NCBI GenBank assembly: GCA_965235115.1
Contig: OZ249445.1
Coordinates: 18,476,001 to 18,540,000 of the forward strand
Direction: 5' to 3'
Length of the DNA: 64,000 nucleotides
Source of the DNA: Laetmonice hystrix
Lineage: Eukaryota
The notes beneath the pieces were generated by a model. It saw nothing but the letters and a program-made list of their open reading frames with translations. It did not search any database and had not been told where the DNA came from. This document shows positions 1-44,650 of the stretch, piece by piece. The translations under genes and the position numbers were made by a program. Each line of letters starts with the position of its first letter. Position 1 is the first letter of the stretch.

Positions 1-51
1 TTTCCCGTTGTTGTGTAGAGCCTTCATGAATTATATTATGAGTAGAACCTG

Positions 52-3214: not shown

Positions 3215-3439
3215 TAGCCTGGTATGACTTCACATAGCCTGGTATGACTTCACATAGCCTGGTATGACTTCACATAGCCTGGTATGACTTCACATAGCCT
3301 GGTATGACTTCACATAGCCTGGTATGACTTCACATAGCCTGGTATGACTTCACATAGCCTGGTATGACTTCACATAGCCTGGTATGACTTCACATAGCCT
3401 GGTATGACTTCACATAGCCTGGTATGACTTCACATAGCC
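3215..3439. repeat. Minisatellite, 20-bp unit (TAGCCTGGTATGACTTCACA), about 11 perfect copies
   Basis: Read directly from sequence. Confidence 0.97.
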
Positions 3440-11730: not shown

Positions 11731-11857
11731 TGAACGGATGTTACCGCCAGACTATTATTGTAAAGCTATTGTCGGCGTATAAAGAAAGTTTCCGATAGTG
11801 AACGAATGTTACCGTCAGACTGTTATTGTAAAGCTATTGTCGGCGTATAAAGAAAGT
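11731..11857. repeat. Direct duplication of about 59 bp (period 68)
   Basis: TGAACG(G/A)ATGTTACCG(C/T)CAGACT(A/G)TTATTGTAAAGCTATTGTCGGCGTATAAAGAAAGT occurs twice. Confidence 0.85.
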
Positions 11858-23834: not shown

Positions 23835-24047
23835 AACAAGAAGCGGAAGAAGATGCGACAGGTGAAGGAGCACCCGAAGCCAGAGTATGGCCCTCTGGAC
23901 GAGGTATATGAGGAACGTATGGCCGAGTACCGACGACAAGGAATCAATGTATCCCTCACAGACAAGGACCTGGAGGGGGACCATCGTGTAGCTGTCGACG
24001 GATTGATAACTGAGAAACAATGTCAGCAACTCATGGACCTAGCCAAG
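23835..24047 (+). CDS. P3H: P3H domain 1, exon A1 (NKKRKKMRQ...RVAVDGLITEKQCQQLMDLAK)
   Basis: Acceptor CTAG|, donor |GTATGC; resembles P3H1 RVVMDGVISDHECQEL. Confidence 0.85.
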
Positions 24048-27000
24048 GTATGCCAATAATAACACAGGCTTCTGGTTTATAATTAACGATGCACAAATCA
24101 AATAGAAGTGCATTTAACACATGCGGAGGTGCGAACGCCGCCTTCTACTTTTGCCAGTTTTAGTTTAGACAAGGTTTCAGCATTTTGACATCACAGGCGA
24201 CAGGGATGTGCATTTCCCAATCCAAGCATTGCTATCATACCATTTTCATGTAGAAAAAAGTTTAAAAAAGAATAGACCTGCAATGTTAAGTATTTCTTCT
24301 TCTAGGTTGGGGCAAGTCAAGGGGATGGTTACATGAATTCAAAGGCCCGTTCTCCCCATACAACGCATGAGAAGTTTGAAGGGATAACTGTAGTTAAGGC
24401 AGCACAGGTGAGTTTTTATTCACATTTAAATGTCATCAAGTAGAATGTAGGCTTATTGTTTCACAATGTTGCCTGGAAGACATAAACTAATAAGTCAAAA
24501 GTTTTTCTCTGTCATGTCGAACATTTAAAATTGACATGTACCTCTATAAATGTAGCTCGCCAGGGAAGGAGTGATAACGGAGGAATTGGCTGAACTCTAT
24601 CTGAAGATTAGTAACAGGGCAAAGCTGTTCTCAGAACACTACTGGAACCTCCAGACTCCGCTCTACTTTCATTATACACACCTTGTCTGTAGAACAGCAC
24701 TTGATGGTAAGTACTGCCTTTGAACCGCCAGTTTCCAAGTAAGGCCCAAGGGACATTTTTGGTATATTTGATATATTGTTGGTAACATCCCACACATGGA
24801 CTTTGCTAATCCTAGGACATATATCATAAGTGATAAACACAAATGTATCAAGAGAAAAGTCTCTAGATTTTGTTGAATTTTCTTTTAATTAATAGATTTG
24901 TACCCCTCTTTCAAAGCTAGCTGATAAGTTAACCTCAGTAGATTATTAATATTTAAAAAATGTATCTACATTGTATATAGTGGAGAAGATTTATTTTTAT
25001 TTTTAGTGAAGTTGGTTTGTAATATGTGTCTTGTATTTTATATGGTGTCTTCCCCCCCCCCAACTGGTTTTGCTCTTGTACATTATTTTGATTCTATGAA
25101 GACAGGAGCAAAGCACACAGAAAATTGCAAAAAAAACCCAAATAGGTGAAACTCAGATCTCTTACCTATGGTCTTACTTACAGTATTACAATCTCTTCTC
25201 TTGGCCCCTGAGATAGAGCCCCCAGACTTAGCTTTGAACCTAATGAAAAGGTTTGTCATGTTGTTGAGTTTGTTAGGTGTATCATGTAGATACATGAGGT
25301 CTGAAGATGATCATAGAGTATGATCTATGCAATGTATCAGTTATGGCCATGGTCATAAATCACATACTCGCAGTTCCAACGTATGCCACTATTTCTATCT
25401 ACTCTTACATTTGCATGTTGCTTCTTATTTTGCTTCATTCAATCAAGTCCTTACAAGCACATCCATGAAGGTCCTACAAGTTTTATTTTACTATTTTGTA
25501 TGGTGTATGGGATTTAATAATAAAAGAGTGTTTTCAGGGAAAATTTGTGTAGCCTCTTCAGTCTAGATAGTTTAAAGATTGAACTCTAGATTCACTGAGA
25601 TTTCGTTGTTAACTCCCTTGTTATCTGGATTTGTCTCTCTTTGCTATCAGTACTATAGAGAAATACTTTCTTCCCACTACTTGTCTTTAGATAGGGCTTA
25701 TTTGCCGCTTGAATTTTACTGCTAGAAGTGTCCCTGCCACAACCTGTCAATAGTGAAAAAAAACACCAGAGTGTGATTATGAGACTGTCTTTATGAGTAA
25801 CATGAAACGTTAGACGGTGTTGTTTGTCTCTGCCTTTCAATATTTATTATTTTAAAGGTGCTATTCGTGAACAAAAATTCGATTTTTTTATTTTTAATTT
25901 TGTTGACGTTTATGTGATCCCACCTGTCATGGAAATAGATTCACAACAAAGGAAATCAAAATTTTTCATGGATAACGGCACAAATGGGGCTCTCACAGAA
26001 GGCCTGTGGAGACCCTGACACGCACCACCATAGGAAATGGCTCTATCTCGGTGCGCACCGAGATAAGTTTCAAATGCTGCACTCAAACTAATAGAAGGTT
26101 TATCAGGCCAATGGTATCGGTAGGAATTTTTTCTAGTACTATGTGCACAATGTATGATAGGAGAAATGCCATTCTGTGCGAGACGAATAGCACCTTTAAT
26201 AGGGAACAATTTTGGAAATTTAATATATTTGTTTCTTATGAATTGTGAAAGCGTTGCATGTTGTATTATGAATGTATTGTGTATAATTGGTTCCGGCTTC
26301 ATTCACTTGGTCTGTGTCCCAGTGTGACAGTGTGGCTTGATGATGTATACAATAAATTTTTATTACCAGGCCAGAACCTGCGAAAAGACCTCAGTCACCC
26401 AATCCATGCAGATAACTGCATCCTGAACCGTGAAAGTGGCACCTGCCTTCGCCGAGCTCCTGCCTACACCGAGCGAGACTTCAGGTAGCCTTCCATTTAT
26501 TAATGTTTCAAAGACTTGGTGTTTGAAAACCCTTGTTTTCTGACCCTGACAGAGAAGGAGGACCCAGGGAATTGCTTTGCTGACACTGAGGGCCAGGTGT
26601 TGTGTTTCGATCCTGAGACGGTGAAGATTGACACTGAGGGGGACATGTCGTGAGTTAACACAAGTCAGCATGTTCGGCACCCCCTACCCCCCCCCCCCCC
26701 CTACGTCAGCCATCACTTTCCCTTTCCCGTCATGCCTGCGCTCTCTTAGATTAACACACCACCTAGGTTGTATGTTTATGTAACTTGCAGGTCAATGATA
26801 CTGGCACATTTGACTTGTTTTCTTACAATCCTGAGTATTTGGTTCACAGTATTCAGTGATAAGATTTCCTCTCCTAAAAGTTTCTCGTCGTTCTGAGTTC
26901 TATAGAAATGCATTATCTTATTTCATAAGGCAGGTTCTAATATTCCTTATGGTCTAAGAAACAGAAATGGAGGTATTATTTGCCCTTAACAGACTTATGT

Positions 27001-30000
27001 GCATGTACGTGTTTGTGAAGTCCATGACATGTTTCATCAACATCATATGGTGTGTATTGTTACATGGATCTATGCACAGAACACCAGTTTTTGATGAGCA
27101 CCACATCCCTACATCTCCTACTGTGCCGCAGCTGATACTGAATTGTGTGCTACATTAGGGTCGCTCGTGCTTTCTGAAGAAATGAGTTTAAAATAGATGT
27201 TAGGTGAATTGGCTTTAGTAGGTTAGGTAGGTCGTGAACATATGGAATGGATCCTTTGTATTGCCAACCTGGGGGGCAGAAAATGACCATTGAACGATAG
27301 CTTTCCAGCTGAAGATGTCATTTCTTTTTTGAAATGAGCAGGTTTTTTGGGTACCTCTTTGGAATGCCTTTTAAAGAAAGATTAATCTGTACGAATCTAC
27401 CATGAGGCCCATTCTCCTTTTGAGGGAATACTGTAAGTAAGTATTTGATTTGGGGAGACAGTATGTATAGCATCCCCTTTTTTTAAAAGGCGACAGCCTC
27501 ATATGCATGCAGGTCCGCTAGTTAGCTGGAAGTTGAAGTAGATACCTCGTATGTGTTAATATTCTAAAACAAGTACTGTCAAACGTTGAGATAATCATAA
27601 GATATCCCAGGACTACCATATTTTGAGGAAGCCTGGTTGAAGATGGTACACTAGTATTTTACTTTAGCCAATGCCTTAAGTTTAAATGAAGCTTTTGTAA
27701 CTAACAACGACTAACGTTCGATGTAAGACGTGGTGACACAGGCAACATTAAAGTCATAAATGTGTCATCATGTACTTCATAAAGAAGCACAGTGTCCCTG
27801 CAAGGAAGCAACATAATATGCTGTATTAAACGAGGTGCTGGGCATGTAACATCTGAAGTACTTAGTGATTGTTGCAAGACGCCTGTATGTAGTGTATTAT
27901 AGTGTATAACACTATAGATATCGTGTGTGGTATAATGTTCTCATATTAATCACATGTTCTTAACCTCTCTGCTTTAGTGCTCTACTCTACCTGAATGGAG
28001 ATTTTGAAGGAGGAGATTTCTTCTTTGCGCACAGAAATCTTTCTGTCCATGTGAGTAACCTTACACGTTAACATCCTAAGTACAGAACATTGAAAAAAAA
28101 GATAATACTAGTTACATATTTCTCTTTCCAATTATACCAAGAAACTATGATTCCGGTCACTAATGATCGAACAGCATGTTGTAAGACAACGTGTCTGAGG
28201 CGCCCTTGTCTATTTATATCCGTTTGGTTTCCAGAAAAAACTCCACCCCAAGTGTGGCCGGATGGTAGCGTTTGAGGCTGGCCATTACCACGGAGTGGAG
28301 GCAGTGAAGAAGGGACGAAGGTGTGCCGTGGCCCTGTGGTTCACACTGAGTGAATATGATGCTGAAACCAACCGTCGCGAGGCAGAGTCGATCCTTCGCA
28401 GTTTGAGCGTCATGAAAAAGTGGGTTGTTGCCCACCGTGGTTTTATATAGGCCTAGATCATAATGTATGGCAGGAATGTGCTAACTTCAGCAGTGACCAG
28501 GCTTGATATTGTGGATTTTAGTCAGAGCTTTAAAAGTTGTAAAAATAAGGAAGACATGTATGAGTCAGTTCGTAGTTTCTTTTTGACAGTGTGGTTTGTA
28601 CACAGTAATTTGCGGTATGGCAATGCTAATGCAGACTGCCATTCAACTACCGTACTTTTATAAAAAGTCGAAATTTTCGAAAGAACGGGTAACTAACTGA
28701 GCCTCGTGTTTATTATCAGTAGCCATTCCACCATCTCAGTGCTTCAATACGGGTGTTTGTGTTTAAAGGATGGAAAATGATCTCCTTCGTAATCTACTGG
28801 AGAAACATGACATCCGCATCATTAGAACGGAGAATGAGCTCGATGGGCCGGAGAGGTTCGCAGCTGATGGCCTCGTGACCAAATCAGAGTGTGACAAACT
28901 CATCCAGCTTGCAAATGTAAGTTACGAAATTATGCGAGTCTGGTTTAAACAAAAGTACTTATGGTATTTTGATTTAAGGGGTAAAGGGAGTTTGGAGTCG
29001 AGGAAATAACGGATCGCTATTGCTAGAATAGATTATTACTTGTGATGTCTTGTGTACTGATATAGTGTGTTGGCTTTGTCTGTTTGAAATTCGTTATTAT
29101 GGCCAAGGATAATATACCTACATTATCCTTGTTATGGTTTTGAAGTGTTGATGTTAGCAAGGCCCAACGTTAAATGTTCTGACTGAGGTATCACTGAACA
29201 GTGAATCATACCTCAATGTCCTTTCTTGTCTTCTGCGTCTTACACATCTTAATAATAACCACTGTTCCCGTGGGCCCCGAGTTATATGATGTAGTCCAGT
29301 ATGTAGTACAGTAATACAGTGTAGTACGTTGACATATTGCTAATGTCAGGAGGGCGGCCAGGTCGGGGATGGCTATATGTCAACAAGAACATCACAGCAA
29401 CTGTCACCTCACACTCGCCACGAAAAGTTCGCCGCTCTCACCGTCAAGAAGGCCGCCGAGGTCAGGCGCCACTAGATGGCAGCACTTTGATCTTTTTCAG
29501 TGTAACCAATCATCACTAGGGGGCAGCACCTAACCACACGTGCACTGTTTACGTCTGCTTGTTTATCGGGTGTGTTGCTGTTTCAGCCGTTTGCTATTTA
29601 CTGACCCTGATCGGTGTTGGTTGACCTGACAACATTCCTCCGTCGAAACCGAAAACTCTACGAAATCACACAGCTGTTATGTGTGATTGAAATAGAGAAG
29701 AAAATGATAAAATGAGAGATATCACTTCAACCACAACTCAACCCGCATTGAGCCCTTGCAGTCTGTCAGACTGTTCAAGTGATCGGCAGTGATGTTTTGT
29801 AGAGTGGAGTGATATTTCTACACCCCAGTTTTAGTACATTGATGTTGTGGTTATTAGTGCTGACGGGTTTTCTTTCAGTTGGGTGGCGGTGCTATGTCTT
29901 GACACCTGTAACACGTTTACCTAGATGTAGATAGTACTACAGTATAACAGGAGGAAGTTCCAGTCGGACACAAGTATTGGTTTGATGGATGTTGGCTCAA

Positions 30001-33000
30001 AACTCTCTTTATCCATTCCTACTTCACAAGGTCTTTGGTTCTGTGCTCTTTCTACTTCAGGAAGCCTCTAGTTCTGCCCTTTCAGACATGTACAGGTAAA
30101 ACGGATCAAGTCTACTTGAATATACTTGCAAGGTTCTTGTTTTGAAATAGAAAAGGAAACTGATTTTTATTTGGGTCAATTATTTGGCCTAAGTTCTTGT
30201 TACGGAAAAAATTATTATAGTAATAACTAGAGATAAAATGTCATGAAAAGTTTGAAAGGCAGCAAGGACCTTGCTTGTATTTGCTAGTGTAGACTCAGTG
30301 ATCATACAATATTTTATGAAGGTATCCCTGCAAGATTATTAACACTGTACATTGTAAGGATACATCAAACTGGAAACTGTGTTAGCTAGAGGGTGATTTA
30401 ACATTTTATTTCCCATATGTAAGTGTTAAAAAAGTCATTGGAAGTATTATGTTTGAAATTGAAACTAGAGGTTGCTGAAAACACCTGATGTCTCTAAAGC
30501 TGACACATTTTCAGTGATCATTATAAATAATTGTTCCTACCTGACTCGAACCTTAGGATGGGTGTAAGCAAGTAGCGTGGAAGCTCAGCCCGGCTGACTT
30601 GATAAGGTAACACCTTGTACAATAACTGTGTAACGGGAGTCAAGGATACGCAACTCTTAGTCTGGTGTGGTTGTGTTTGCTCCCGACCAGGCTGGTGGAT
30701 TAGAAGGTGATGGGTATAAGACGAAAGGCAAGCAAGGATCACCTCATACAAGTCACGAAATGTTTGAGGGTCTAACAATCATCAGGGCTACCCAGGTTGG
30801 TCATGCATGGACCCCCTTCCTCCACTGCCACCCCGCATCCATAACACCCCAACCACCCGTCCCTCTTAGACACTTCATGTTAAAATGTTCACTCTAGTAT
30901 TAAGTTTCTTGGGTTGCTTCATGTTTATAATGTCTTAGTATGGGGTGCTTGATATTTTCCTTGAAATTATATCGAATTCTGTATTTTAGAAGTTTGGTTC
31001 TTAAAATAAAAGCAGGTACTGTAAATAATTCTATGAACCCCAGGAAAGAATGAAATACTGATGGCGACCTGTTTATATGTTTGTATATGTCGTCATAGTA
31101 TAGATCATTATATGCTATTAAAGTATTCTAAATTAGCTAATCTTAATAGGCTGATAGGTATCAGCGTTGTTAATATAATAACCATGTGACTATTCGTAGC
31201 CATTTACAACGCCCCTCTTTCTAGTTAGTTAGTTTTAATTGATAGAGCAACTTAATATAAGCTTTAGAGATACTGTATTGATCGTGAACAATATGTGTTG
31301 TAAAGATATCTTTTAGCTCGCTAGTATATGCTTTAGATAGAATATATAGTTATGGGAGTAGTTGGATAGGTTGTAAACCGTCCATGTCTCATAACACAGA
31401 AGGTAACGAGGATCGGACAGTCATACAGATATTCTAGTAATTAAACATAAAGTCTTTCTACATGATGAATCACAAGACGTTTTTTACGTTTGTACCCGAA
31501 CAGTTTACTGCGTGTGTAGGTCAAAGGTCTAGAATTTAGCATTTGAGAAATGACCAAAAAATATATATACGGGAAATATGAATCATTTAATAAGTGGCAT
31601 AAAATTGGACTTGACATAGTAATGGAATGCATACTGAATGCGTTGTTGACTGAAGACGGCCATGTACGATTACAGTTGGCTGCAGCAGGTAAAGTTGACG
31701 TGGAAGCCGTCGAGTTATATCTGGAGATAGCCGAGAAAGGGCGCCATCTGACGGCGACCTACTTTAACCTGAAGACTCCACTCTACTTTGATTTCACACA
31801 TCTCGTCTGCCGTACAGCACTAGGGGGTAAGTTGGTACCTGCAGTAAACGGTTCGCTGCTATCAAGTTCTCTCTTAAAATAAATGCCAGGAATGAAGAGG
31901 GATGGTGCATGGTCGTGGAGTCAACGTAAAGAAAAAAACAATGCTTCTAGTGAAGGTATTCAGAGGGAAAGTTTAGGTGAGGAAAGATTTTAGGTCCCAA
32001 ATCATTGAGATATTATATGGTTTGCAGTGCCGGGGGTATTTGACATTGGCGTAGATAGGATATGTTTAAAAGTTTGATGGAGGTAGTGTAGAAGTGTTAA
32101 CTGTTTAGAGATATTATATAGTTTGCAGTGCCGGGGGTATTTGACACTGGCGTAGATAGGATATGTTTAACAGATTGATGGAGGTAGTGTAGAAGTGTTA
32201 ACTGTTTAGAGATATTATATAGTTTGCAGTGCCGGGGGTATTTGACACTGGCGTAGATAGGATATGTTTAAAATTTTGATGGAGGTAGTGTAGAAGTGTT
32301 AACTGTTTAGAGATGTGACTTATCGTTGTTTGAATGATTCAGACGAAGGGACCCTGAGAACTGACCTCAGTCACCCAGTACACTCTGACAACTGTATACT
32401 ACAGAACGACGGCACCTGTCTCCGACAGGCCCCAGCCTACGTCCAGCGGGACTACAGGTACACGGCCATAACTTCTGGCTTAAGTTTGGGGAAACTGGCC
32501 ACAGAGCTCTTGGTAACAGTTCACATAAGGTGGAAAACCCCTTCAAGCTGATAATTTTCTAACACTTTTTCTTGATGTCATATAGAGTCAATAAGCACTA
32601 GTCAAGTAAAGATGAAAGTTCACCCCAAAAATTGTCGTGTGTTTCAGTGCTATCATCTACCTAAACGGAGACTTCAGGGGTGGAGAATTTTTCTTTGCAC
32701 ATCCTAATCGGACAGTTCAGGTGAGAAAGCTAAGCCAATCGAATGGAATTCTATGACTCTTGTGGATACGCTATATTTGAGACATTTATTGTTGGTCCAC
32801 TCCAGACCATGAAATGTTTCAACTGTGTTGAAGCTGTCATATTTTGTTGATGTGAAAAATGTAGCCCTACTTGCCCTTGCACAAATACCAAACATCGGAT
32901 TAGTTTGTAAGATTGGTGTCCTGTGATGACCAAGCTGCGATCAAACAATAGTGAAATATCACTAGTGGTGATCTTATTCTGGCAATTTCTGCTTATAGTC

Positions 33001-36000
33001 TGTACATGTTATATTTGATTGCATACTGGTACCGTACTTATAATATTGCACGAGGAATGCATTGCCTGGCACTATAGGATTTCATTGATTGAAGCAAGGA
33101 CTTTTAGATTGATTATAAGATAGCATGTGGATGATTTGCATGCCTTTTTTTTATAAGTGTTGGAGTTTATATGTCAATTGAATTGACATGGATCAAATAT
33201 ATACATTTTTAAACGAAAAGGTTGGGTTGAAATCTTGAATAATTGCATGGTGGGATACCATATTCGTTGTTTATGAATGCTAAACCGGGGAAGTACAGAC
33301 GTTGACAAAAACTTCAGTCAAGTCCAGACTGACATCTGACAGTGTCAACGTTTCCAACCGTCGGCTCCCTCTGGTTGGTTTTTATTTTGTGCCGTTGTAT
33401 CACACTGTGAGGGGTTACAAAAGTTACAATCCAGCCTGAATTCACTGACATGCGAACGGTGGTGAGGAGGCGAGGTGGATTGGGATGTGTATGACCAACT
33501 AGTCTCCATTTACAGACCATCCTGAAGCCGTACCGTGGCCTCATAGTGTCGTTTGAGGCGGGCAACTTACATGGTGTGTTACCAGTCCTGTCTGGCCAGC
33601 GTTGTGCCGTCACGGCCTGGTATACTCTCAACCCGAACTTTAACGAGGCAAACTGGTCGCATGCCTTAAAGGTTCTCAGCGACATTAAACGACTGAAGGC
33701 GACAACACGAACCTACGCTCATAGCGAGCTATAGGGTTCAGCCGGCTCAACATCGCGGCAAGTGTACCCCAGTCGTACTGACTCAAAGGATTCCATTCAC
33801 CCATCAATGCTTCTGGTCACTGCTAGTTACATATTGTACATTTGGTGATTTTCAAAAGAGGGTCACAGCAGTTTCTATTGCAGCTAGTAATAGTATTTAC
33901 CAGATTCAGAATTTCTGCCTTAAATCCTGAAACAATCTTGGACGGGTTTTTCAAAACTGAAGTTCTTGATTAAGTTTAAACTTGACGCTTCTGATTGGCT
34001 GGTTGCTTAGATCAACCAATCAAAAGCGTTAAAGGTAAGCTTAAGAAGGAACTTAGGTTTAAAAACCCGGGACCATGATCAATGGACAGCTGATGTATTC
34101 TCCATGTATTGATGAATATCTCAGTCTGTTACACATTTGGCCCACCTAATTAAGAAAATTAGAGAATGATGCCAGCCCGTGGTGCATCAAGTTTATATGG
34201 CCCCGCTGGTTGTAAATATAAAGCCATATTTATCACCAAGTATATGATGTACCGCAGCGTCACAAGTAATGCTAATTTCCACGCCTTCGACTTAGCTCGA
34301 CTGACAATTATCCAGCTAAGACTAGATAAGTTTCCTGTGGCCCTGGCTATGGACGCTAACACTTATAATTATTTTTATTTAGATAATTGCAGTACTGGCT
34401 TACGACCTTTTATCACTGAGAGCAGTGACACATTGTCTTAGAGTAGTGTGAAGTCTTAGTATCTTAGTTTGCTAGGAAAAGGATTCATTTTGCGCAACAG
34501 CTGTGACGGATATGACTCTTACATGAGGGGAAAACTTGAAGAAACAAGATGCTAATAGGGTGTGCAAGTGGGACAAGAAAAAACATGAGAAAACACGAGA
34601 ACAGCCGGGTTTGGTCCTAACGTCATCATAATCTCGCCACTTTACCATTGCGAATCCCATAGGAGCCCTCAACTTTTAAATACATGTATTATTATTTCCT
34701 GTTTTACGTATGAAAGAATACTTTTCCTTTTTTAGATGTCAAAATTGACAAAAATCTGGTCGATGTTTGATGTTTTCTCATCCTATGTTAAACCAATTTA
34801 AAAATTGTGACGTAACAATCGTTTAGGGACCAAAGTGACGCGTTTCGAGGCTATTTCTGCTCATTTACATGTCAAGGAGGACCTGTGTTTGATATCCAGT
34901 AACTTGGACTCTATCTTACTTGGTGAAATCTGTATTTAGTCTCTTTGAGAAGGAAAGGTAGACCTGCTGCTGATACTTGTATCAATATACTAGCGCCTCG
35001 GGTGAGGATAGAATGCATCTATGTTACGAGGTCTTTCAACAGAGAAGAACCCTATTGGTCGAGAGACCGTAGAAGAAAACATTAGGGAGAGACATGCATT
35101 CACTTCGCTGCGTTTTGCTATATGCTAGTGGAATTTAACCCTGAATGCAGCACTTTATGAAGAATCGTGCCCCAGACCGACCATCACTGTCATTTAAATG
35201 AAAGGGAATCTTGTCCAGAATGATTGAAGGGAACACTGTTGCATGCCCCTTAGAAAGGTTACTAACGTCACTGTAATACATACAAGCACCGGAACCCAAG
35301 TTCCGGAGGCAATAGGAGCATGCATACCTACACCATCCCCTCACCCACAATGCTTAACTAGATATAAGTACTTCCATGCTGCCTTGTTCTTTTATCGAAA
35401 GGAATTTCCGTGGCGTATATATTATATATAAAATTCGCCATGTGTTGCTGTTTAAGGAATGTGTATAGCTCATGTTTTAGAAGAAAAAGGAGGGGTGTCA
35501 CGTCAGTGGCCCAGTGTTCAACACTGGTTTCTACTTACAGCCCGCCTAAGATTGTCCCGCATTACCCCTGTTCTACTAAACAGCCTGAAGGGCTTTGATA
35601 AGTTTGTTGATCTCTGAGCATTGCGTGCATTCGTTAGCATGGCATAATAATGGCATGACCAATGATAATCGTGAGATGGTATTTAGCCTGCTCTGACTTC
35701 GTTTGGAATAAGTCGGTAATAATGGCCAGTTTAATCTCGGAGGAATTAAGCTATGAGTATAAGTACAGCTTCAAGGTACTTAAATATAATGCTGTGCATC
35801 GTGCGACATCTTGAATATGTTTATCATGTTCTACGGAATATGGAAAGGCCTACAGTGGCAATAAATAAATGGGCTGAGTGGTGTGTTTTTAATGCAAGTA
35901 CAGCACCTAATTCGGATCATGTTCACCAATATTCAGGTAATGGTAATCATTATTTCCAAGTGCTTGTCTCACGACACTAAGAATCTCATTGGTCAGAGCG

Positions 36001-36694
36001 TTAACAAAACATGATGTTGTGGCGCCAGGCCCCCGGTTTCAGAAAGGGTCGAAGCAGCAAGCTTGAAGTTAAGCAGTGCTACGGTGGCCCACGAGGACAA
36101 CATACACTTTGATTTTCATGGATATTTTCATGGCAGTGGAAATATCAGGGCGGTGAAAATATTGCCACCATGGTTAAATTATTATCACTGTGAAAATATC
36201 GATGAAAATCAATCTAGAAAGTTAGAAACACTAAAGGTATATATGTCCTTATGGGCTGCTGTAGCTCTGCTCAGCTTAAGCTTGCTGCTTAGATCCTTTC
36301 TGAAACTAGGGCCAGGAGACGAAATACATCAGTGCATGATCCTACAGCGTGTACACCCAGCTTGTTTAGCTCTGTTTTGTTGGCATATAACTCTTGGCTC
36401 CTTAGGTTCCATGAAAGTTCTAGGAGGAGACTTACTTCATAGTTACCATTATATTAACTTCAATGTTATGTTTGTTTCTTTTTTCAGAATGAGTTGAAGC
36501 CCAAAGCTGGGATGATGGTAAGCTTCAATGCCAGTAACCTACATGGGGTGAAGGCCGTCAAGAAGGGCCAGCGGTGTGCTATTGCTCTGTGGTTTACTTT
36601 GAATAAGAAATTTAAAGAGAGAGCACATTTAATTGCCAAGAAGGTGGTAGAGGACGTGAGGGAGCGACGCCGTCATCGGCACAGTGAACTGTGA
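23835..36694 (+). CDS. P3H: Prolyl 3-hydroxylase (P3H/leprecan family), multi-exon gene encoding two tandem 2OG-Fe(II) dioxygenase domains with C-terminal HSEL (about 545 aa plus an unlocated signal-peptide exon)
   Basis: Exons translate to P3H hallmark motifs twice (GDGY..SPHT.HEKFEG, PLYF..THLVCRTAL, SHP(I/V)HxDNC, RD(F/Y)SA..YLNGDF.GG, HGV.AV..G.RCA..LWFTL), with GT-AG boundaries and consistent phases. The two domains have matching exon sizes (151, 115, 73 bp). Confidence 0.9.
24306..24407 (+). CDS. P3H: P3H domain 1, exon B1 (VGASQGDGYMNSKARSPHTTHEKFEGITVVKAAQ)
   Basis: TCTAG| ... |GTGAGT, 102 bp, phase 0-0. Confidence 0.92.
24556..24706 (+). CDS. P3H: P3H domain 1, exon C1 (LAREG...TPLYFHYTHLVCRTALD)
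   Basis: TGTAG| ... |GTAAGT, 151 bp, phase 0-1. Confidence 0.92.
25856..26195. mobile_element. MITE with 13-bp TIRs (AGGTGCTATTCGT) and TTAA TSD, Kolobok-like
   Basis: TTAA|AGGTGCTATTCGT ... ACGAATAGCACCT|TTAA; internal perfect palindrome TATCTCGGTGCGCACCGAGATA. Superfamily inferred from the TTAA TSD and purine termini. Confidence 0.7.
26370..26484 (+). CDS. P3H: P3H domain 1, exon D1 with the HAD iron-binding motif (GQNLRKDLSHPIHADNCILNRESGTCLRRAPAYTERDF)
   Basis: TACCAG| ... |GTAGCC, 115 bp, phase 1-2. Confidence 0.93.
26553..26649 (+). CDS. Candidate alternative exon D1' (EKEDPGNCFADTEGQVLCFDPETVKIDTEGDMS), diverged exon-D copy lacking HxD
   Basis: CTGACAG| ... |GTGAGT, 97 bp, same phases (1-2) as D1, open in frame, and shares the NC..C..TE.D.S pattern with D1. 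Confidence 0.5.
27978..28050 (+). CDS. P3H: P3H domain 1, exon E1 (SALLYLNGDFEGGDFFFAHRNLSVH)
   Basis: CTTTAG| ... |GTGAGT, 73 bp, phase 2-0. Confidence 0.93.
28235..28419 (+). CDS. P3H: P3H domain 1, exon F1 (KKLHPKCGRMVAFEAGHYHGVEAVKKGRRCAVALWFTL...SVMKK); read-through would stop at 28450
   Basis: TTCCAG| acceptor; an internal donor |GTGGGT at 28420 joins exon A2 in frame (AA|G = Lys). Confidence 0.88.
28769..28916 (+). CDS. P3H: P3H domain 2, exon A2 (MENDLLRNLLEK...RFAADGLVTKSECDKLIQLAN)
   Basis: TTTAAAG| ... |GTAAGT, 148 bp, phase 2-0; homologous to A1. Confidence 0.88.
29350..29460 (+). CDS. P3H: P3H domain 2, alternative exon B2 (EGGQVGDGYMSTRTSQQLSPHTRHEKFAALTVKKAAE)
   Basis: GTCAG| ... 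|GTCAGG, 111 bp, phase 0-0; carries the GDGY..SPHT.HEKF motif. Confidence 0.8.
29469..29529 (+). promoter_or_regulatory. Pair of CTCF-like motifs (CCACTAGATGGCAGCAC, CACTAGGGGGCAGCAC) flanking a CCAAT box
   Basis: Close match to the CTCF core consensus; lies 8 bp after the exon B2 donor. Confidence 0.5.
30691..30795 (+). CDS. P3H: P3H domain 2, alternative exon B3 (AGGLEGDGYKTKGKQGSPHTSHEMFEGLTIIRATQ)
   Basis: ACCAG| ... |GTTGGT, 105 bp, phase 0-0. Confidence 0.85.
31676..31826 (+). CDS. P3H: P3H domain 2, exon C2 (LAAAGKVD...TPLYFDFTHLVCRTALG)
   Basis: TTACAG| ... |GTAAGT, 151 bp, phase 0-1. Confidence 0.92.
32007..32314. repeat. Intronic tandem repeat, 101-bp unit, 3 copies
   Basis: GAGATATTAT starts at 32007, 32108 and 32209. 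Confidence 0.9.
32343..32457 (+). CDS. P3H: P3H domain 2, exon D2 with the HSD motif (DEGTLRTDLSHPVHSDNCILQNDGTCLRQAPAYVQRDY)
   Basis: TTCAG| ... |GTACAC, 115 bp, phase 1-2. Confidence 0.93.
32648..32720 (+). CDS. P3H: P3H domain 2, exon E2 (SAIIYLNGDFRGGEFFFAHPNRTVQ)
   Basis: TTTCAG| ... |GTGAGA, 73 bp, phase 2-0. Confidence 0.93.
33516..33734 (+). CDS. P3H: P3H domain 2, alternative terminal exon F2 (TILKPYRG...LHGVLPVLSGQRCAVTAWYTL...TYAHSEL*)
   Basis: TTACAG| acceptor, phase 0; distal His and 2OG-binding Arg present; ends in HSEL. Confidence 0.85.
   Translation, partial: TILKPYRGLIVSFEAGNLHGVLPVLSGQRCAVTAWYTLNPNFNEANWSHALKVLSDIKRLKATTRTYAHSEL
33943..34069. mobile_element. Degenerate hairpin MITE (PIF/Harbinger-like termini CGGGTTTTT...AAAAACCCG)
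   Basis: Arms of about 57 bp are imperfect reverse complements around a short loop. Confidence 0.55.
36029..36312. mobile_element. MITE with about 55-bp TIRs and a possible CAG TSD (PIF/Harbinger-like)
   Basis: GCCCCCGGTTTCAGAAAGGGTCGAAGCAGCAAGCTTGAAG... pairs with ...CTTAAGCTTGCTGCTTAGATCCTTTCTGAAACTAGGGC; CAG flanks both sides. Confidence 0.7.
36488..36694 (+). CDS. P3H: P3H domain 2, alternative terminal exon F3 (NELKPKAG...LHGVKAVKKGQRCAIALWFTL...RRRHRHSEL*)
   Basis: TTTCAG| acceptor, phase 0; near-canonical P3H motif HGVKAV..GQRCAIALWFTL; ends in HSEL. Confidence 0.9.
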   Translation, partial: NELKPKAGMMVSFNASNLHGVKAVKKGQRCAIALWFTLNKKFKERAHLIAKKVVEDVRERRRHRHSEL

Positions 36695-39600
36695 TGTTGT
36701 CACATAGAGACCGGTCTCGTTAACTTGATGTGATGGGTTGATTGTAAGCAGTACACGTGGGAACAGATCACTGGGTGATACAGATTGATAAACAGGTGCG
36801 TGGTCAAACTCTAGGCTGGACGACGTGCTGTTTTCACCACTCTATGTGTCATCATGTATGCCTGTTGGCGTGAATGCTGTTGTCTTGTCCTGTATATATA
36901 GAAGTTGTACGGTGTCTAGCCAAAGTTACAAGTACTACTTAAGGGACACTAATTTGGTCCGCATTTCAGGCGCCAAACGTTGGAAGCAGACGTGTAAGTA
37001 GGTGCCGTTTAGACGAACACACCTGGTAGGTGTAACCAACAGGTGTACCATAAACTGCAGTTTTTCAGGTAATATCCAGACAAAGTTGTGAGCCTGCAAG
37101 ACTGAGTTTACGCTTTTGGGTCTTCTGCAAGAAGAGTTACGTAGAGACATAAGCATTTACAGGAGTTAAGAAATACGAAGACCCGAAACTGATCATGAAA
37201 AACTTTACTCTGGTCATAGCAGATGTTCTGTGTTTTAGGTTGGAGCATTAACAACACATTATTTATCGGGCCCGCAAAAATAAATGTGATAAGCCAGAAA
37301 TTTGGATTAAACAACGTCTTCACTTGCAGGTCGATCATGGACTAGAGTTGTCGATGAATAACGTTATTTGTGTAGTCGAATTTAGTTGTCATTTTGACTG
37401 TTAACAGAAATCATTTACAGCTTGTTGATACGTATAGTACCAAAGGTAATATTGTCAGATTGCCTAATGTACAACTTAATTAATTCGGTAAGATGTTTCC
37501 TGTTTCGATGTTTATATTTATAATTTTAGTTCATTATATTCTATGGTAAATTTTGTGTGAGTGGTATATATTGTGTGAATGGGCAGATATTACCCTTAAA
37601 ATAGGTCCAGCCCACGACGTCTGTTTTACTGTAGAACGTTTGAATTTATTAGCTATATTCAGTCAGATGAGAGAGTGTTGTAAGGACGACAGGGGGTAAG
37701 TTAGTAATGGAAGAAGAATAGGGTAATTTAGTTACAGTGATGGCATCTTGCCTTTGATCGATACACAATGACAATCAGGTGAGTTTTGTAGCGTGGCAAT
37801 GGATGACGATTTCAGACAAAGAATCCCGTGTATTTATGTGCCGACTGGGTGGAAGTCATGAGTGAGCCACCCAAGATGATGGACTAGTCTCGCATGCCAT
37901 GTTAGTCTTCTTATTGGTCTGAAGGTTGGGGAGCTACCACAGTAGATATTGAGAAAACATACGATAGTCCATATATCTACCTAGTAATTCGGGTCAGAAT
38001 CTGAAGAATCCGTTCGCTGTGTTTGTTGTGGACTAGGCTGCCCTCTGATGAGATTACAAAGTGACCCAAAGGAAACCACCCACTAGATGTATCGACTAGA
38101 ACTTGAAATTTACTGGGCAAAAAGGGAGGGATAAAGGGGCTTCTCACACAGGGGATTAATTCTTAGCATTGATCATGCAATTATAAATTCAAGATAATAT
38201 TGATAATAGTACCGGTAATAATAATTGCCTTTTTATGCGCCAGAATTAGCTGTTTAATTAATGCCGAAATGCGTGCCTTGACTTCGCCGCACTTAAAACA
38301 ATGATGTGATATAGGGAATTAAGGTTGCCTAAAGGCTACTGCTCTTATGATACATACAGAAGGCCTTCTTGGAGGGCCGTGCTGTATTATGGGACCAGAA
38401 AGTTTTAAGCTCCTGGTGCTATGTCTTTCCCAGACACGCTATCTCATTTACTTATTGAATAGAGTTTGTAAGGATGACAAGTTGCGTGTGTGCATGCTGC
38501 TGTGTGGTTTTGTGTGCGTAAACAAGTGTGCGTCCGTACGATAAGAAAGAGTCATGTTTACAGAACAGGATATTAGGTTACTACTCTCTCGAAAGCAGTT
38601 CCTTTCATACTTCATATGTCGCATCCAGACCTCAGATATATTAGAAAGTGGAGGCCTGCAATATGCACGGTATTCGTGGATGTGTGCAATTGGAGGTCGC
38701 CATCAGCGCGCTTTACGGTATTGGTAGTTGTAGTTTTAGTTATATATACTTACAGCGAAGGAATCGTTGAATCTGGTGCTGTCCGGTTTCCACACAAGCA
38801 TTATGATATTTGGTGACGACATTAAAAACCTGTACACTTCCCTCTTGTTATGGCGTGTATGTAGACTTCAGCGGCTTTATTTACACAATAATGTATATTT
38901 GAATATAAAAAAACTATACTTATTCAAGTAATTTAAGGTGGGCCCAAGGTCTCCAAATGTCGGAATATGACTGGGATGTTTGACAATGGTTTTGTGAAAC
39001 ATTCCATGCAGAAAAAGTAAGATTTTGTATGTTCAACAGAACCGTGAACAGTCCTCGGTTGAATAAAGTGGTCCCAGTGCTTCCATGCAAACCGCAGTTA
39101 AGTTGTTCTTCACAGGGGAATGATCTCAAGTTATGTATGGTCTTAGATGGTATAGTTGAGAACTACCATTTTACATTTTAAATACCTCTGAATTCACACA
39201 TTGGCTTTCCTGTGCCGAAGATAGACATCAGAATTGATCTGTTTCGAATCTAGTAGCAGAAATGTTCTTTATCTTCAGTTAAGTCTTTCAGTCTCGTCGC
39301 AAAATGGTATAACATTTACTTGGCGCTTTCGTTGTTTACACATTGATGGCTAGAGATTTTGTTATTTTCAGTAACATGTAATGGTTAGGGTAAAACTGTT
39401 TTTTTAACATTCAGTATTGATCGAGGTGTCAATGCCGGGGTGCGGTGGCGGCAGCCCCAAAGTTTTTTAAAGACAAAAGGGAAAAGTTTTTAGAGAAAAG
39501 TTACTTCAAGCGAACGAGTTGCTATTACAATGATCAAAGTAACAGTTTGTGTAACAATTTAACAGTTGCACAAACTTACAATTCCTTGTATTTCGGGGAC

Positions 39601-40894: not shown

Positions 40895-42623
40895 ATGGCC
40901 GGAGCGGTCAGTGATGGCGCTATCCTGACTACAGTGGCCCTGCCCTGGAGGGACACGTCTGCTAACATACAGGAGGACGGATATCTCAATGGCACCACCT
41001 CCACGGTGACGCTGGCTGGATGGGAGACGTTTTACTTCTGGACAGCGCCCGTCGCTATCCTTGCTGGACTCATAGGTAACATACTCCAAGGGGGATGCTG
41101 ATTTGCTCCTATATAAACATATACTTCATGAGTAGGGTTTTGATATGAGCGTCGATAACAGTTTAGAACTCTGCAAACTTAGCTTTGACAAGATATTATC
41201 TTTTGGAACACACATCGACAAAGTGTATAACGTTTAGAATTTTGACTCTAGTACACCGATCGTATGAATCAGGGTGTTCCGAGGCAAACATATTTGATCT
41301 TTTTTCCTCACTGTTCTCCTTTCTCAGTCCACATCTCGAATATGCTGGTCGCGCTTATTATATAGGGTTCAGTTGAAATGTGGAATAGAACTGTAGGGTA
41401 CATGTTAGCTCGTCTAAGACTATACTTGTACTTGGACATAGAATGGGGCATAGAAAACCATTCTTTGCCTAATTAGAACATGCTTGACCTAATACATTGC
41501 CCTAATAAGGATTATAGTCGGTCTACTCTAGCGAATCAGTTGACATTGTAATTATAAAAGTGTGTACGTGTATACCTAATCCAAGATGATAATATTATTG
41601 TATCCATGAACGCCGTGAATATAATGGATTATTTTTATTCCAGGCAATACGCTATGTATGGCGTTGTTATGTCGCCGTCGCCTACCGTTGTCCGTTGCCA
41701 GTCGGATTTATCTGATCACCTTTCTGGTGGCCGATCACCTCTACCTGGCCCTCGGCGCCGTCACGTGGCTTTCTGACGGCGTCGGCGGTCACCTGGGGCA
41801 CCCCCAGTTCCTGACCCAACTCCAGGTGGCGCTGCGCTCTGACGTAGGTTGTCGCGTGACGTCATACGTCATGTTTACGTCTCGGTTGGTGTTGGAGTGG
41901 ATGTTGGTATCACTGACGGCCGACGCGTACCTGGTCGTGTCGCGACCATTCAGACGCAAGGACCACACGACCAGGAACGCTGTCGTCGTTGTGGCTGTAT
42001 TCACAGCTGTCGGGCTGGCCGTGGGAGTGGCGGTGTTTGTGGGACGTCAGGCCGGGGTGGACGGGGACGGTCACCCCGCATGTGTGGACAACGACCTCGG
42101 GGTCGTGCTGACCATGGCTAGCGTCATGTTGGTGGGAATGTTCCCACCAATCTTCCTCCCCGTGTTAGGGGTCTGCCTTGCCGCCATGCTCGCCGAGTAC
42201 GAGCGATTTATGCGAACCCGTAAACCAAGGAAAATCCCCAAACCGCCGCTGCGATGTCGTGTGGTATTACCTTTAATATTGTCCGTCGTGTTCTCAGTAA
42301 CTATATCGCCGTATTTGGCGTGGACCATAGCGTATTTACTGTCCCGGGCATGGGGCACAGAGGGAGGGTTTACGTTGGCTCTGACATTCCTGGAGGAGCT
42401 CTCCCATATTGTACTGTTGATTACGTCGGCACTTTTCACGTTATGTGTTTGTCTTGCTGGGCAAGTCTTCCGTGCAGAACTTTGTGCTATGCTGTGTTGT
42501 AAGAAGGGAACTGTTAATGAGCGCAGTTCGAATCGTCCAACCTTACATTTAACAAATATCGCTAGTGGAAGACCAGTGACGATCTCTAGTGGAAGATTTG
42601 TGGAGTCGATGACTCAGTTGTAA
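40895..42623 (+). CDS. Rhodopsin-like (class A) orphan GPCR, peptide-receptor-like, 2 coding exons (40895-41075, 41644-42623), 386 aa
   Basis: Exon 1 has an NGT sequon and the start of TM1; phase-1 intron GTAACA...TTCCAG restores LIGN. Seven hydrophobic segments, TM2 FLVAD, TM3 C...W..VSLTADAY..V.RP, helix-8 FRAEL. AATAAA at 42631. Confidence 0.9.
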
Positions 42624-43138: not shown

Positions 43139-43211
43139 GATCGCGTGGCCTAATGGATAAGGCGCCTGACTTCTAATCAGGAGATTGTGGGTTCGAGTCC
43201 CACCGTGATCG
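43139..43211 (+). tRNA. tRNA-Arg(TCT): tRNA-Arg(TCT), intronless, copy 1
   Basis: 73-nt cloverleaf: acceptor GATCGCG/CGTGATC, anticodon arm CCTGA-CTTCTAA-TCAGG, T loop GGTTCGAGTCCC; Pol III T7 terminator at 43222-43228. Confidence 0.96.
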
Positions 43212-43639
43212 GTTGAGTAGGTTTTTTTAGTATGATGATAGAGGTAATATCATAACAGGTCATTGATCGGACGAGATTGTGGGACCACCACGGCTCTTCA
43301 ATAGATCCACACGGTAAAGGAATATTGTTATTGATTAATATATGTGCTTTAGGTGAAGTCCATGTTGAATGGCAAGGCATAGCATGAAGCATAGCCCAAG
43401 GTTGATTGCTTTCTGGCAGTCCATCTTCCACTGATATTTGTTGAAATAACCGTGGTGTATACGACATAGTGGGACCGTTACCTTGCAGTGAGTGAGGGTC
43501 CATTCATTAGTGAAATACTGAAAGGGGAGGCACCTTTAGTCACATTAACCAAATGTGTTAAAACTATTTCTGACTACTCTATTTCTTTATGTTTAGGCTG
43601 ATTACATTCAAAATTCCTGATTTTACTAAAATCATGCGT

Positions 43640-43712
43640 GATCGCGTGGCCTAATGGATAAGGCGCCTGACTTCTAATCAGGAGATTGTGGGTTCGAGTC
43701 CCACCGTGATCG
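43640..43712 (+). tRNA. tRNA-Arg(TCT): tRNA-Arg(TCT), intronless, copy 2 (identical)
   Basis: Same 73-nt sequence, 501 bp downstream; T6 terminator at 43723-43728. Confidence 0.96.
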
Positions 43713-44650
43713 AAGAGTTACCTTTTTTAATACATAAGAGCAATTCATTCTGCTAGCGTTGATTAGCTCTTGCACACTCTGCATAAGCCATTGATCACAT
43801 AGGGTCGAGTGTGGGTCAATCTTAAAAATTACCCTTGCGTTTCATACTCCATCTATAGGAGGAGAAACATCAAGCATGTAAGACACGTGGGTCCAGGGGT
43901 CAGGACTTTGTGGATCAGATTCCTGACATGATATCTGTTGGACCCCAAGTTTTAATTTTTCACGTTGGTGATGTATCATATAGAGTGCTTACATTCATTG
44001 CTGACATTTTATTTTGGCGGAATTCGTTTTCTGATTTTTGTTGTTGAGTCGGTAGAGTTTGTGAGTCGGTACAGGTAATAAAATGACTAAACTACTGGTC
44101 CCGTGTCATTGCCACCTCAGTCATCTGATATCATGTCCGTGGAAGCATCCATCAGGATTTTATAAGAAACCCGAAGACTCTTAATTGTTCGTTTCTTCAG
44201 GATATACACCTTTCTCACGCGAATAGCGAATCAAGTAACCAAACTATAGCAAGTATGGCGTCTGATTGGCTTATTACTAAATAGTTCTGGACTTATGGCG
44301 CCAGGCTGCCGAGAAAGGTTGAAGAGAGCTTATATAAGATGTAGGTACCTATAAATATAGATGATTAACTAGAGGAATGGGTGGGTATTTGGGGTTTTAC
44401 GCCTTGCAACAGCCAGGGTCATATCAGGGCGGTGAAGATGATGATGAAAGTCAGTTTTTCTTGGTCCTTGGGATGGTTTCATTAGTCAAATGACGATTTC
44501 TTTTGTGTTTAGAGGCTAGGGTCGAGGCTTGTCATATCTCTACCAATAAAAGCAGTATTTAGATTATGTTAATTAGTCCATAAAGACGGGTGATTATATC
44601 AGTCAGAGATGACCGGCGGTGATTGGGTGTCAAAGGACAGCTGTAGAGTC

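What the first reader, a model, noticed from the sequence alone, without database searches (positions are those of the whole stretch)
23835..36694. Prolyl 3-hydroxylase with two tandem, apparently intact catalytic domains in one polypeptide
Seen: two complete P3H exon sets (A-F) in series. Exon F1 has an internal donor (AA|GTGGGT, 28420) in the phase that joins exon A2 (AG|G ATG, 28769) in frame. Both domains keep the HxD ligands (HAD, HSD), the distal His and the 2OG-binding Arg. Established: vertebrate P3H1-3 have one catalytic domain behind an N-terminal helical leprecan/CRTAP-like region and a KDEL-type tail. Inference: domain 1 alone has no ER-retention signal and domain 2 alone has no signal peptide but ends in HSEL, so a single two-domain ER enzyme is the simplest model. 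Read-through of F1 to the stop at 28450 would give a one-domain isoform.
Basis: partly seen in the sequence, partly recalled or inferred. Interest (0 to 1): 0.8.

Follow-up and report, generated by a model that had tools for sequence, protein, structure and literature searches.

The report
Two-domain prolyl 3-hydroxylase gene
The window holds the back two thirds of one very long collagen prolyl 3-hydroxylase gene that most likely encodes two complete catalytic domains in a row, a layout already predicted in worms, lamp shells and molluscs but never studied.

Summary
Two full P3H-type exon sets lie in series (23835-28450 and 28769-36694). The F1 donor (exon end 28419) and the A2 acceptor (28769) join in frame. 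Both domains keep every residue shown to matter in human P3H1 (R569, H587, D589, H659, R669, W675).

- The signal peptide, five leprecan-TPR exons and a linker exon lie 17-87 kb upstream of the window on the same strand, in matching phases. The model is 934 aa and ends in HSEL.
- Annotated relatives have the same TPR + domain 1 + domain 2 layout (Capitella, Helobdella, Lingula, seven molluscs).
- The intron between the domains has the same phase and place in both annelids.
- Two intron-free transcript contigs from other organisms carry both domains in one reading frame.

However, domain 1 has lost its iron ligands in molluscs and the leech, and is intact here, in Capitella and in Lingula. I found no paper describing the layout. 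No RNA data for this species could be examined.

The parts
23835..24047 (+). Exon A1, first exon of catalytic domain 1 (phase 0 to 0). It is spliced from the upstream linker exon X, which lies outside the window.
   Evidence: Strong acceptor tttgtttattactag|AAC and donor AAG|gtatgc. It aligns to the Capitella domain 1 start.
24306..24407 (+). Exon B1 (GDGY...SPHTTHEKFEG segment of domain 1).
   Evidence: This segment is deleted in mollusc and leech domain 1.
24556..24706 (+). Exon C1. It holds HLVCR, the equivalent of human P3H1 R569.
   Evidence: Phase 0 to 1, as in the homologs.
26370..26484 (+). Exon D1 with the iron ligands H-A-D (equivalent to human H587 and D589).
   Evidence: Aligns to PDB 8k0e_A residues 578-612, E 2e-9.
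27978..28050 (+). Exon E1 (LYLNGDFEGGDFFFAH).
   Evidence: Phase 2 to 0.
28235..28419 (+). Exon F1 with the distal His, the 2OG Arg and the Trp (equivalent to human H659, R669, W675). It ends at the donor AAA|gtgggt, phase 2.
   Evidence: 8k0e_A residues 641-697, E 3e-11. PF13640 positions 60-97, 26.6 bits. One SNP, synonymous.
28420..28768 (+). Intron of 349 nt between domain 1 and domain 2.
   Evidence: Same phase and place as the junction introns of Capitella and Helobdella. The tail carries 2 SNPs and a 16-bp deletion in another allele. No polyA signal.
28769..28916 (+). Exon A2, first exon of catalytic domain 2. A stop codon lies just upstream in frame, so it must either be spliced in or start at the ATG at 28770.
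   Evidence: DLLRNLLEKHD...ELDGPERFAADG is conserved with Capitella. Two SNPs, both synonymous.
29350..29460 (+). Exon B2, the first of two alternative B-type exons of domain 2 (phase 0 to 0).
   Evidence: Paired B exons also occur in leech, oyster, scallop, Lingula and Capitella.
30691..30795 (+). Exon B2', the second B-type exon (phase 0 to 0), 49% identical to B2. Probably mutually exclusive with B2.
   Evidence: Oyster RefSeq isoforms differ by exactly these two exons.
31676..31826 (+). Exon C2 (HLVCR, the R569 equivalent).
32343..32457 (+). Exon D2 with the iron ligands H-S-D.
   Evidence: 8k0e_A residues 579-612, E 2e-5. One SNP, synonymous.
32648..32720 (+). Exon E2.
   Evidence: One SNP, synonymous.
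33516..33734 (+). Exon F2, an alternative last exon with His, Arg, Trp and an HSEL stop.
   Evidence: 50% identical to F2'.
36488..36694 (+). Exon F2', the last exon with His, Arg, Trp and an HSEL stop. It is the copy closest to the terminal exons of the homologs.
   Evidence: 8k0e_A residues 640-694, E 2e-11. Best E-values to all homologs.
37279..37284 (+). First AATAAA after the F2' stop, the likely polyadenylation signal of the gene.
   Evidence: The next gene starts near 41658.

Best explanation
This is one gene of at least 18 coding exons spanning about 123.6 kb (contig C11, 18,389,103-18,512,694). The window holds only its 3' part.

It encodes a protein of about 934 aa that works inside the endoplasmic reticulum. 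The parts, in order, are:
- a signal peptide;
- the leprecan TPR-like region;
- a short linker;
- two P3H-type Fe(II)/2-oxoglutarate dioxygenase domains in tandem;
- an HSEL retrieval tail.

Domain 1 is joined to domain 2 by splicing from the donor at 28419 to the acceptor at 28769.

Both domains keep the full set of iron and 2-oxoglutarate ligands. The likeliest working model is therefore that each one hydroxylates proline in collagen-type substrates, probably at different sites. Domain 2 can be varied by a choice between two B exons and two last exons.

The gene is the counterpart of the annotated two-domain 'prolyl 3-hydroxylase 1-like' genes of annelids, brachiopods and molluscs.

Shown here: the exon set, the frames, the residues, and the homology and shared gene structure.
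Inferred: the splice itself in this species, activity of both domains, and substrate.
For: - Exon sets and in-frame junction.
- Upstream exons on the same strand: PF23557 hits in the species' own genome lie only at C11 18.389-18.439 Mb. Five TPR exons with phases 0,0,1,1,0 and linker exon X are mapped. Exon X matches Capitella (QYKFSDADLD versus KYKFSEADLD). The 934-aa model has a single stop.
- Homologs: the profile search returns 643-1002 aa proteins with two matched stretches. They carry TPR_leprecan plus 2OG-FeII_Oxy_3. Their sources name them P3H1-like, or hypothetical or unnamed proteins, of Mizuhopecten, Haliotis, Ruditapes, Solemya, Plakobranchus, Mytilus, Crassostrea, Helobdella, Lingula and Capitella.
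- Gene structure: phases C 0-1, D 1-2, E 2-0 are shared. The junction intron is phase 2 at the same place, within 2 residues, in the window, Capitella and Helobdella.
- One blastp alignment runs from the TPR region across the junction into domain 2 of the Capitella protein (41% identity).
- Transcript contigs from other organisms hold both domains in one reading frame: L011, 2036 nt and L016, 3413 nt.
- Catalytic residues are mapped on PDB 8k0e and on the mutagenesis data in PMC11381544.
- In another allele, 5 of 5 exonic SNPs are synonymous, while the read-through tail is disrupted.
- There is no polyA signal between the domains.
Against: - No RNA evidence for this species: no listed run is on record as RNA.
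- Run X4, of unknown kind and with only 59 M letters of contigs, holds the F2' exon and its 3' flank. It was not among the holders of 27900-29500. If X4 is RNA, that part of the transcript was not assembled there.
- The junction donor (AAA|gtgggt) and acceptor (aaag|G) are weaker than most others in the gene.
- The introns upstream of A1 are very long (20 and 41 kb) and rest on homology and phase alone.
- The domain tree cannot tell whether domain 1 here shares its origin with domain 1 elsewhere.
- Activity of either domain is untested.
Confidence: 0.75

Rival explanations
1. There are two neighbouring genes. The first (TPR + domain 1) ends at the TAG at 28448-28450. The second starts at the ATG at 28770 and makes a free-standing single-domain enzyme.
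For: - F1 reads on to a stop 29 bases past the donor, and A2 begins with an in-frame ATG.
- The junction splice sites are not strong.
- No junction reads exist for this species.
Against: - A free domain 2 would have no signal peptide, yet both of its alternative ends keep HSEL.
- The Met is absent at that place in Capitella and Helobdella, where the sequence is internal to the protein.
- There is no AATAAA or ATTAAA in the 318 bases between the stop and A2, nor for 2.5 kb beyond.
- The read-through tail and its stop are lost in another allele.
- Relatives' transcripts join the domains.
Confidence: 0.07
2. It is one gene, but the two exon sets are used as alternatives. Mature proteins would carry the TPR region plus either domain 1 (read-through end) or domain 2 (set 1 skipped, using the phase-0 acceptor at 28803).
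For: - A phase-0 acceptor exists at 28803 and would fit the phase-0 donors of exon X or of TPR exon 5.
- The gene clearly uses alternative exons elsewhere (B2/B2', F2/F2').
- If X4 is RNA, it holds the 3' end but not exons E1-B2.
Against: - The acceptor at 28803 would drop residues conserved with Capitella.
- None of the RefSeq isoforms of relatives that were domain-scanned lacks domain 1.
- The domain-1-only form would have no ER retrieval signal and an unconserved tail.
- Transcripts in relatives hold both domains.
Confidence: 0.1
3. It is one two-domain polypeptide, but only one domain is a working enzyme. The other serves as a binding or scaffolding module, as domain 1 does in molluscs and as the C-terminal DSBH (double-stranded beta-helix) domain does in OGFOD1/Tpa1p. 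(This scenario is a subset of the best explanation's single-polypeptide claim and not an addition to it; the best explanation treats activity of both domains as inferred only.)
For: - Domain 1 has lost H587, D589 and W675 in seven molluscs and the leech, yet is kept, so it has a role that needs no catalysis.
- OGFOD1 is a precedent for an active plus an inactive DSBH domain (PMC4396695).
Against: - Here, in Capitella and in Lingula all six key residues of domain 1 are kept, as is the SPHTxHExF segment.
- Domain 1 here is not on a long branch like the degenerate copies (0.94 versus a median end branch of 0.77).
- The one SNP seen in domain 1 is synonymous.
Confidence: 0.25

Closest known systems
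Human prolyl 3-hydroxylase 1 (P3H1/leprecan; PDB 8K0E; PMC11381544)
   Same: Signal peptide, leprecan TPR region, a P3H-type jelly-roll domain with R569, H587, D589, H659, R669 and W675, and a KDEL-type tail. The window exons hit only this PDB sequence.
   Different: The human enzyme has one catalytic domain and works with CRTAP and PPIB. The gene here has two catalytic domains in series. In this genome, matches to the leprecan TPR model (PF23557) were found only in this gene (a lower bound), so a separate CRTAP-like partner was not seen.
Predicted two-domain proteins of molluscs and Helobdella, named 'prolyl 3-hydroxylase 1-like' where a RefSeq name exists (e.g. XP_021368340.1, XP_078332393.1, XP_009029527.1)
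   Same: TPR + domain 1 + domain 2 + xxEL tail, 887-1002 aa, the same exon phases, and paired B exons in domain 2.
   Different: Their domain 1 has lost the HxD ligands, the Trp and the SPHTxHExF segment. The junction intron is phase 1 in oyster and scallop. No second F exon was seen.
Capitella teleta CAPTEDRAFT_167288 (partial model) and its locus
   Same: Both domains are intact, the junction intron is phase 2 at the same place, the linker exon and the start of A2 are conserved, and there are paired B exons.
   Different: The deposited model stops inside domain 2. The remaining exons lie downstream unannotated, including two D-type exons. Its introns are about 55 bp, against up to 41 kb here.
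OGFOD1 / Tpa1p, ribosomal prolyl 3-hydroxylases with tandem DSBH domains (PMC4396695)
   Same: A prolyl 3-hydroxylase built from two jelly-roll domains in one chain.
   Different: It is an unrelated subfamily, is not an ER protein, and has no TPR region. Its second domain has no metal site and is only 12% identical to the first. Here the two domains are 49% identical and both keep the metal site.
Marine metatranscriptome protein P0005 (contig L011)
   Same: Signal peptide, two intact P3H-type domains and RDEL in one reading frame.
   Different: It has no TPR region, a linker of about 60 aa between the domains, and an unknown source organism.

Membership tests
Leprecan / collagen prolyl 3-hydroxylase family (P3H1-3) | N-terminal leprecan TPR-like region (Pfam PF23557) | tested here: met
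   Five exons upstream of the window on the same strand match PF23557 positions 2-309. Exons 1 and 2 score 70 and 50 bits.
Leprecan / collagen prolyl 3-hydroxylase family (P3H1-3) | C-terminal 2OG-Fe(II) oxygenase domain of the P3H type | tested here: met
   The D and F exons of both sets hit only human P3H1 in the PDB (E 2e-5 to 2e-11). The three F exons match PF13640 positions 60-97 at 26.6 (F1), 19.7 (F2) and 26.0 (F2') bits; these are fragments, so they fall just under the 27-bit whole-domain cut-off. The spliced protein could not be submitted to Pfam.
Leprecan / collagen prolyl 3-hydroxylase family (P3H1-3) | Catalytic residues H587, D589, H659, R669 and R569 (human P3H1) | tested here: met
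   All are present in domain 1 and domain 2, and in both F2 and F2'. Their role is shown by mutagenesis in PMC11381544.
Leprecan / collagen prolyl 3-hydroxylase family (P3H1-3) | ER targeting: signal peptide and KDEL-type C-terminus | tested here: inconclusive
   HSEL is present on both last exons. The N-terminus has a hydrophobic stretch, MGCTIFLAILSVFQITVVSA, aligned with the homologs' leaders. No signal-peptide predictor was available.
Leprecan / collagen prolyl 3-hydroxylase family (P3H1-3) | 3-hydroxylation of proline in collagen Gly-Pro-4Hyp sites | not testable with these tools
   Needs an enzyme assay.
Lophotrochozoan two-domain P3H subfamily (annotation only) | TPR region followed by two dioxygenase-type domains in one reading frame | tested here: met
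   The 934-aa model has one stop. It is colinear with Capitella, Lingula, Helobdella and Haliotis proteins in single alignments. The splice itself was not observed in RNA.
Lophotrochozoan two-domain P3H subfamily (annotation only) | Short intron at the domain 1/domain 2 junction and paired B-type exons in domain 2 | tested here: met
   The junction intron is 349 nt, phase 2, as in Capitella (56 nt) and Helobdella (about 150 nt). Paired B exons occur in five other lineages.

The most novel reading that the evidence does not exclude
This would be a collagen prolyl 3-hydroxylase with two active catalytic centres in one chain, representing the ancestral lophotrochozoan state. That state would be kept in some annelids and brachiopods and would have decayed to an enzyme-plus-pseudoenzyme pair in molluscs and leeches. 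The second centre would be further diversified by conserved mutually exclusive exons. In that case a single gene, the only leprecan-family gene detected in this genome, would do the work that vertebrates split among P3H1-3 and their non-catalytic partners.
Probability: 0.45. Interest if true: 0.6.

Novelty: new variant of a known kind. Interest (0 to 1): 0.45.

Why it matters
P3H enzymes are known only as single-domain enzymes, studied in vertebrates because their loss causes brittle-bone disease.

A natural form with two intact catalytic domains offers a ready-made comparison with relatives in which the first domain has become a pseudoenzyme. That comparison could show what the catalytic domain does besides catalysis, such as substrate holding or complex assembly. 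It could also show how site specificity is set.

The conserved pair of alternative exons in domain 2 points to a segment that probably tunes substrate choice.

For annotation, the work shows that the deposited Capitella model is cut short; the Lingula model looks cut short too, though its missing exons were not found. It also shows that this gene extends about 87 kb beyond the window.

Tried and rejected
- **RNA evidence.** Both run searches list no run on record as RNA. Reads were laid on DNA contigs before run X4 appeared, so X4 could not be examined. X4 has 59 M letters, is of unknown kind, and holds F2' plus its 3' flank but not 27900-29500.
- **Domain phylogeny.** The tree is unresolved. 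AU tests (approximately unbiased topology tests) do not reject a single origin of all domain 1 copies (p 0.36), of all domain 2 copies (p 0.45), or the window's two domains as sisters (p 0.48). The tree therefore decides neither shared origin nor independent duplication.
- **Recent duplication or gene conversion.** I consider this unlikely, because the two domains are only 49% identical in protein. The AU test above does not exclude it.
- **A third, degenerate domain between the TPR exons and A1.** No tblastn hit was found with the mollusc proteins.
- **Pfam on the single C and D exons.** No hits; the pieces are too short.
- **Lingula domain 2.** E and F exons were not found within 6 kb after the model's end, so its state is open.
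- **Structure prediction of the fusion.** I judged that folding a homolog would not settle anything.
- **Literature.** No paper in the library describes a two-domain P3H.
- **Earlier notes of this scan.** None found.
Full report
**What is in the window**

Peptides of the first exon set find a second full set downstream by tblastn, and nothing comparable elsewhere in the 64 kb. Splice sites and phases were mapped by hand.

- Domain 1: A1 23835-24047, B1 24306-24407, C1 24556-24706, D1 26370-26484, E1 27978-28050, F1 28235-28419.
- Domain 2: A2 28769-28916, B2 29350-29460 or B2' 30691-30795, C2 31676-31826, D2 32343-32457, E2 32648-32720, F2 33516-33734 or F2' 36488-36694.

F1 read to its donor (AAA|gtgggt) leaves two bases, and the acceptor aaag|G supplies the third. 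The joined product is open to HSEL in all four B/F combinations. An in-frame TAA sits directly before 28767, so A2 can only be spliced in or start at its own ATG.

**The rest of the gene lies upstream of the window**

A search of the species' own genome with the leprecan TPR model (PF23557) finds matches only on the same contig and strand. They lie 37-87 kb before the window start.

I fetched 100 kb upstream and mapped five TPR exons with phases 0,0,1,1,0. In genome coordinates they are 18,389,103-573, 18,392,675-827, 18,411,196-367, 18,418,341-466 and 18,438,440-576.

A 36-aa linker exon X lies at 18,458,693-800, phase 0 to 0. Exon X is confirmed by its match to Capitella (QYKFSDADLD versus KYKFSEADLD).

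A1 has a strong phase-0 acceptor. The full model is 934 aa with one stop, a hydrophobic leader and an HSEL end. It has 18 coding exons over about 123.6 kb, with introns of 20 and 41 kb before A1. Most of window 1-23834 is therefore intron.

**Relatives**

A profile of the three F exons, searched against 1.8 billion proteins, returned as best hits proteins of 643-1002 aa with two matched stretches. These proteins carry TPR_leprecan plus 2OG-FeII_Oxy_3.

Most are automatic gene models. Their sources label them 'prolyl 3-hydroxylase 1-like', hypothetical or unnamed proteins, from seven molluscs, the leech Helobdella, the brachiopod Lingula and the annelid Capitella. Deuterostome, arthropod, priapulid, cnidarian, sponge and bryozoan relatives have one domain.

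The two-domain layout is therefore a common annotated architecture in Lophotrochozoa. I found no paper that describes it.

Dinoflagellate transcriptomes also hold proteins with two or three matched stretches. They form the outgroup in the tree.

**Evidence that the two sets form one reading frame here**

1. *Gene structure.* I mapped the exons of the oyster, scallop, leech, Lingula and Capitella genes on their own DNA. The phases C 0-1, D 1-2 and E 2-0 are the same as here in both domains of oyster and scallop. In every species a short intron separates the last exon of domain 1 from the first exon of domain 2. In the two annelids that intron is phase 2 and lies within two residues of the window's 28419|28769 junction. 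In oyster, scallop and Lingula it is phase 1, about ten residues later.
2. *Flanking sequence.* The residues right after the acceptor (DLLRNLLEKHD...ELDGPERFAADG) are conserved with Capitella, where they are internal to the protein and no Met is present. One blastp alignment runs from the TPR region through the junction into domain 2 of the Capitella protein.
3. *Transcripts in other organisms.*
   - A 2036-nt metatranscriptome contig has one reading frame with a signal peptide, two intact domains and RDEL.
   - A 3413-nt contig of a public run has one 894-aa frame with TPR, domain 1 and domain 2.
   - Genes of this family have 18 or more introns, so these contigs are spliced RNA.
4. *Targeting logic.* Domain 2 alone has no leader, yet both of its alternative ends keep H-S-E-L while the residues before it differ.
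5. *No end signal.* There is no AATAAA or ATTAAA in the 318 bases between the F1 stop and A2, nor for 2.5 kb after. The first one after F2' is 585 bases downstream.
6. *Polymorphism.*
   - DNA contigs of one sample differ from the window at about 50 sites in 27900-33800.
   - The five listed differences that fall in exons (F1, A2 twice, D2, E2) are all synonymous.
   - The 31-base read-through tail carries two amino-acid-changing SNPs and a 16-bp deletion that removes the TAG.
   - The tail therefore behaves as intron, which gives no support to the proposed one-domain read-through isoform.
   - Eleven differences were not listed by the tool, so the count is incomplete.

**Catalytic residues**

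The D and F exons of both sets match only human P3H1 among solved structures. Read against the mutagenesis in PMC11381544, both domains keep H587, D589, H659, R669, R569 and W675. This holds for both F2 and F2'.

The same table shows that domain 1 of all seven molluscs and of the leech has lost H587 and W675, and in most of them D589 as well, together with the SPHTxHExF segment. R669 is retained. Domain 1 is intact here, in Lingula, in Capitella and in the metatranscriptome protein.

Capitella's deposited model stops inside domain 2. The remaining C, D (two copies), E and F exons lie intact just downstream. Capitella, too, therefore most likely has two intact domains.

**History**

The two domains here are 49% identical, so I regard the duplication as old rather than a recent local event. 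The tree does not resolve it, and AU tests (approximately unbiased topology tests) reject none of the three arrangements tried.

Shared order, the shared junction intron and shared paired B exons favour one early duplication with later decay of domain 1 in molluscs and the leech. This is inference.

**Alternative exons**

Two B-type exons in domain 2, both phase 0-0, occur in the leech, oyster, scallop, Lingula and Capitella as well. Oyster isoforms X1-X4 differ by exactly these exons (32 and 39 aa). B2 and B2' are therefore an old, probably mutually exclusive pair. The F2/F2' pair (50% identical) was seen only here.

**How it most likely works**

The protein enters the ER by its leader and is retrieved by HSEL. 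It uses the TPR region as vertebrate P3H1 does, and presents two Fe(II)/2-oxoglutarate centres. Both being active is inferred from residue conservation only. I put it at about 0.6 given one polypeptide.

OGFOD1/Tpa1p is a precedent for tandem jelly rolls in a prolyl 3-hydroxylase, with the second one inactive (PMC4396695). That resembles the mollusc state rather than this one.

**Open point**

No run for this species is on record as RNA. A small run of unknown kind (X4) holds F2' and its 3' flank but not 27900-29500.

**Verdict**

Novelty is moderate: the architecture is annotated but undescribed, and the notable point is that domain 1 is intact here.

Noticed in passing
window 41658-42623 (+): An intron-free 321-aa open frame matching rhodopsin-family 7TM receptors (PF00001, E 4.5e-10). 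It is the next gene after the P3H gene.
   Followed up: partly
window 43139-43211 and 43639-43713 (+): Two tRNA-Arg(TCT) genes 500 bases apart, with equal Rfam scores.
   Followed up: partly
window 44666-45740, 46937-47422, 47887-48484: Three minisatellites: a unit of about 39-40 bp x27, G+C-rich and open in several frames; 81 bp x6; and 33 bp x18. They explain the overlapping long ORFs listed there.
   Followed up: partly
window 51228-52163 (+): A 311-aa open frame with only weak coiled-coil and zinc-knuckle matches, all below the Pfam cut-offs. It may derive from a mobile element.
   Followed up: no
L017 (Capitella teleta) 16992-18199: The deposited Capitella P3H model is truncated. Intact C, E and F exons and two tandem D-type exons (17379-17480 and 17513-17611) of domain 2 lie unannotated after its end.
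   Followed up: partly
L014 (Mizuhopecten) 1-15019 (-); L015 (Lingula) 1091-3349 (+): In the scallop, a second leprecan-family gene (675 aa, TPR + oxygenase) is called on the opposite strand, overlapping the 5' part of the two-domain gene's range. In Lingula, a 208-aa CRTAP-like TPR gene lies just upstream. In the window's own genome the TPR model hit only this one gene (a lower bound).
   Followed up: no
run X4: A run of the same sample with only 59 M letters of contigs and of unknown kind holds 79% of the words of 36488-37300, but was not a holder of 27900-29500. It may be RNA.
   Followed up: no
P0051, P0060, P0074, P0101, P0107, P0135: Dinoflagellate transcriptome proteins (Polykrikos, Pelagodinium, Gymnodinium), plus two unnamed proteins from Logan contigs (P0101, P0107), of 830-1040 aa carry two or three matched stretches of a P3H-like oxygenase domain separated by long spacers.
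   Followed up: partly
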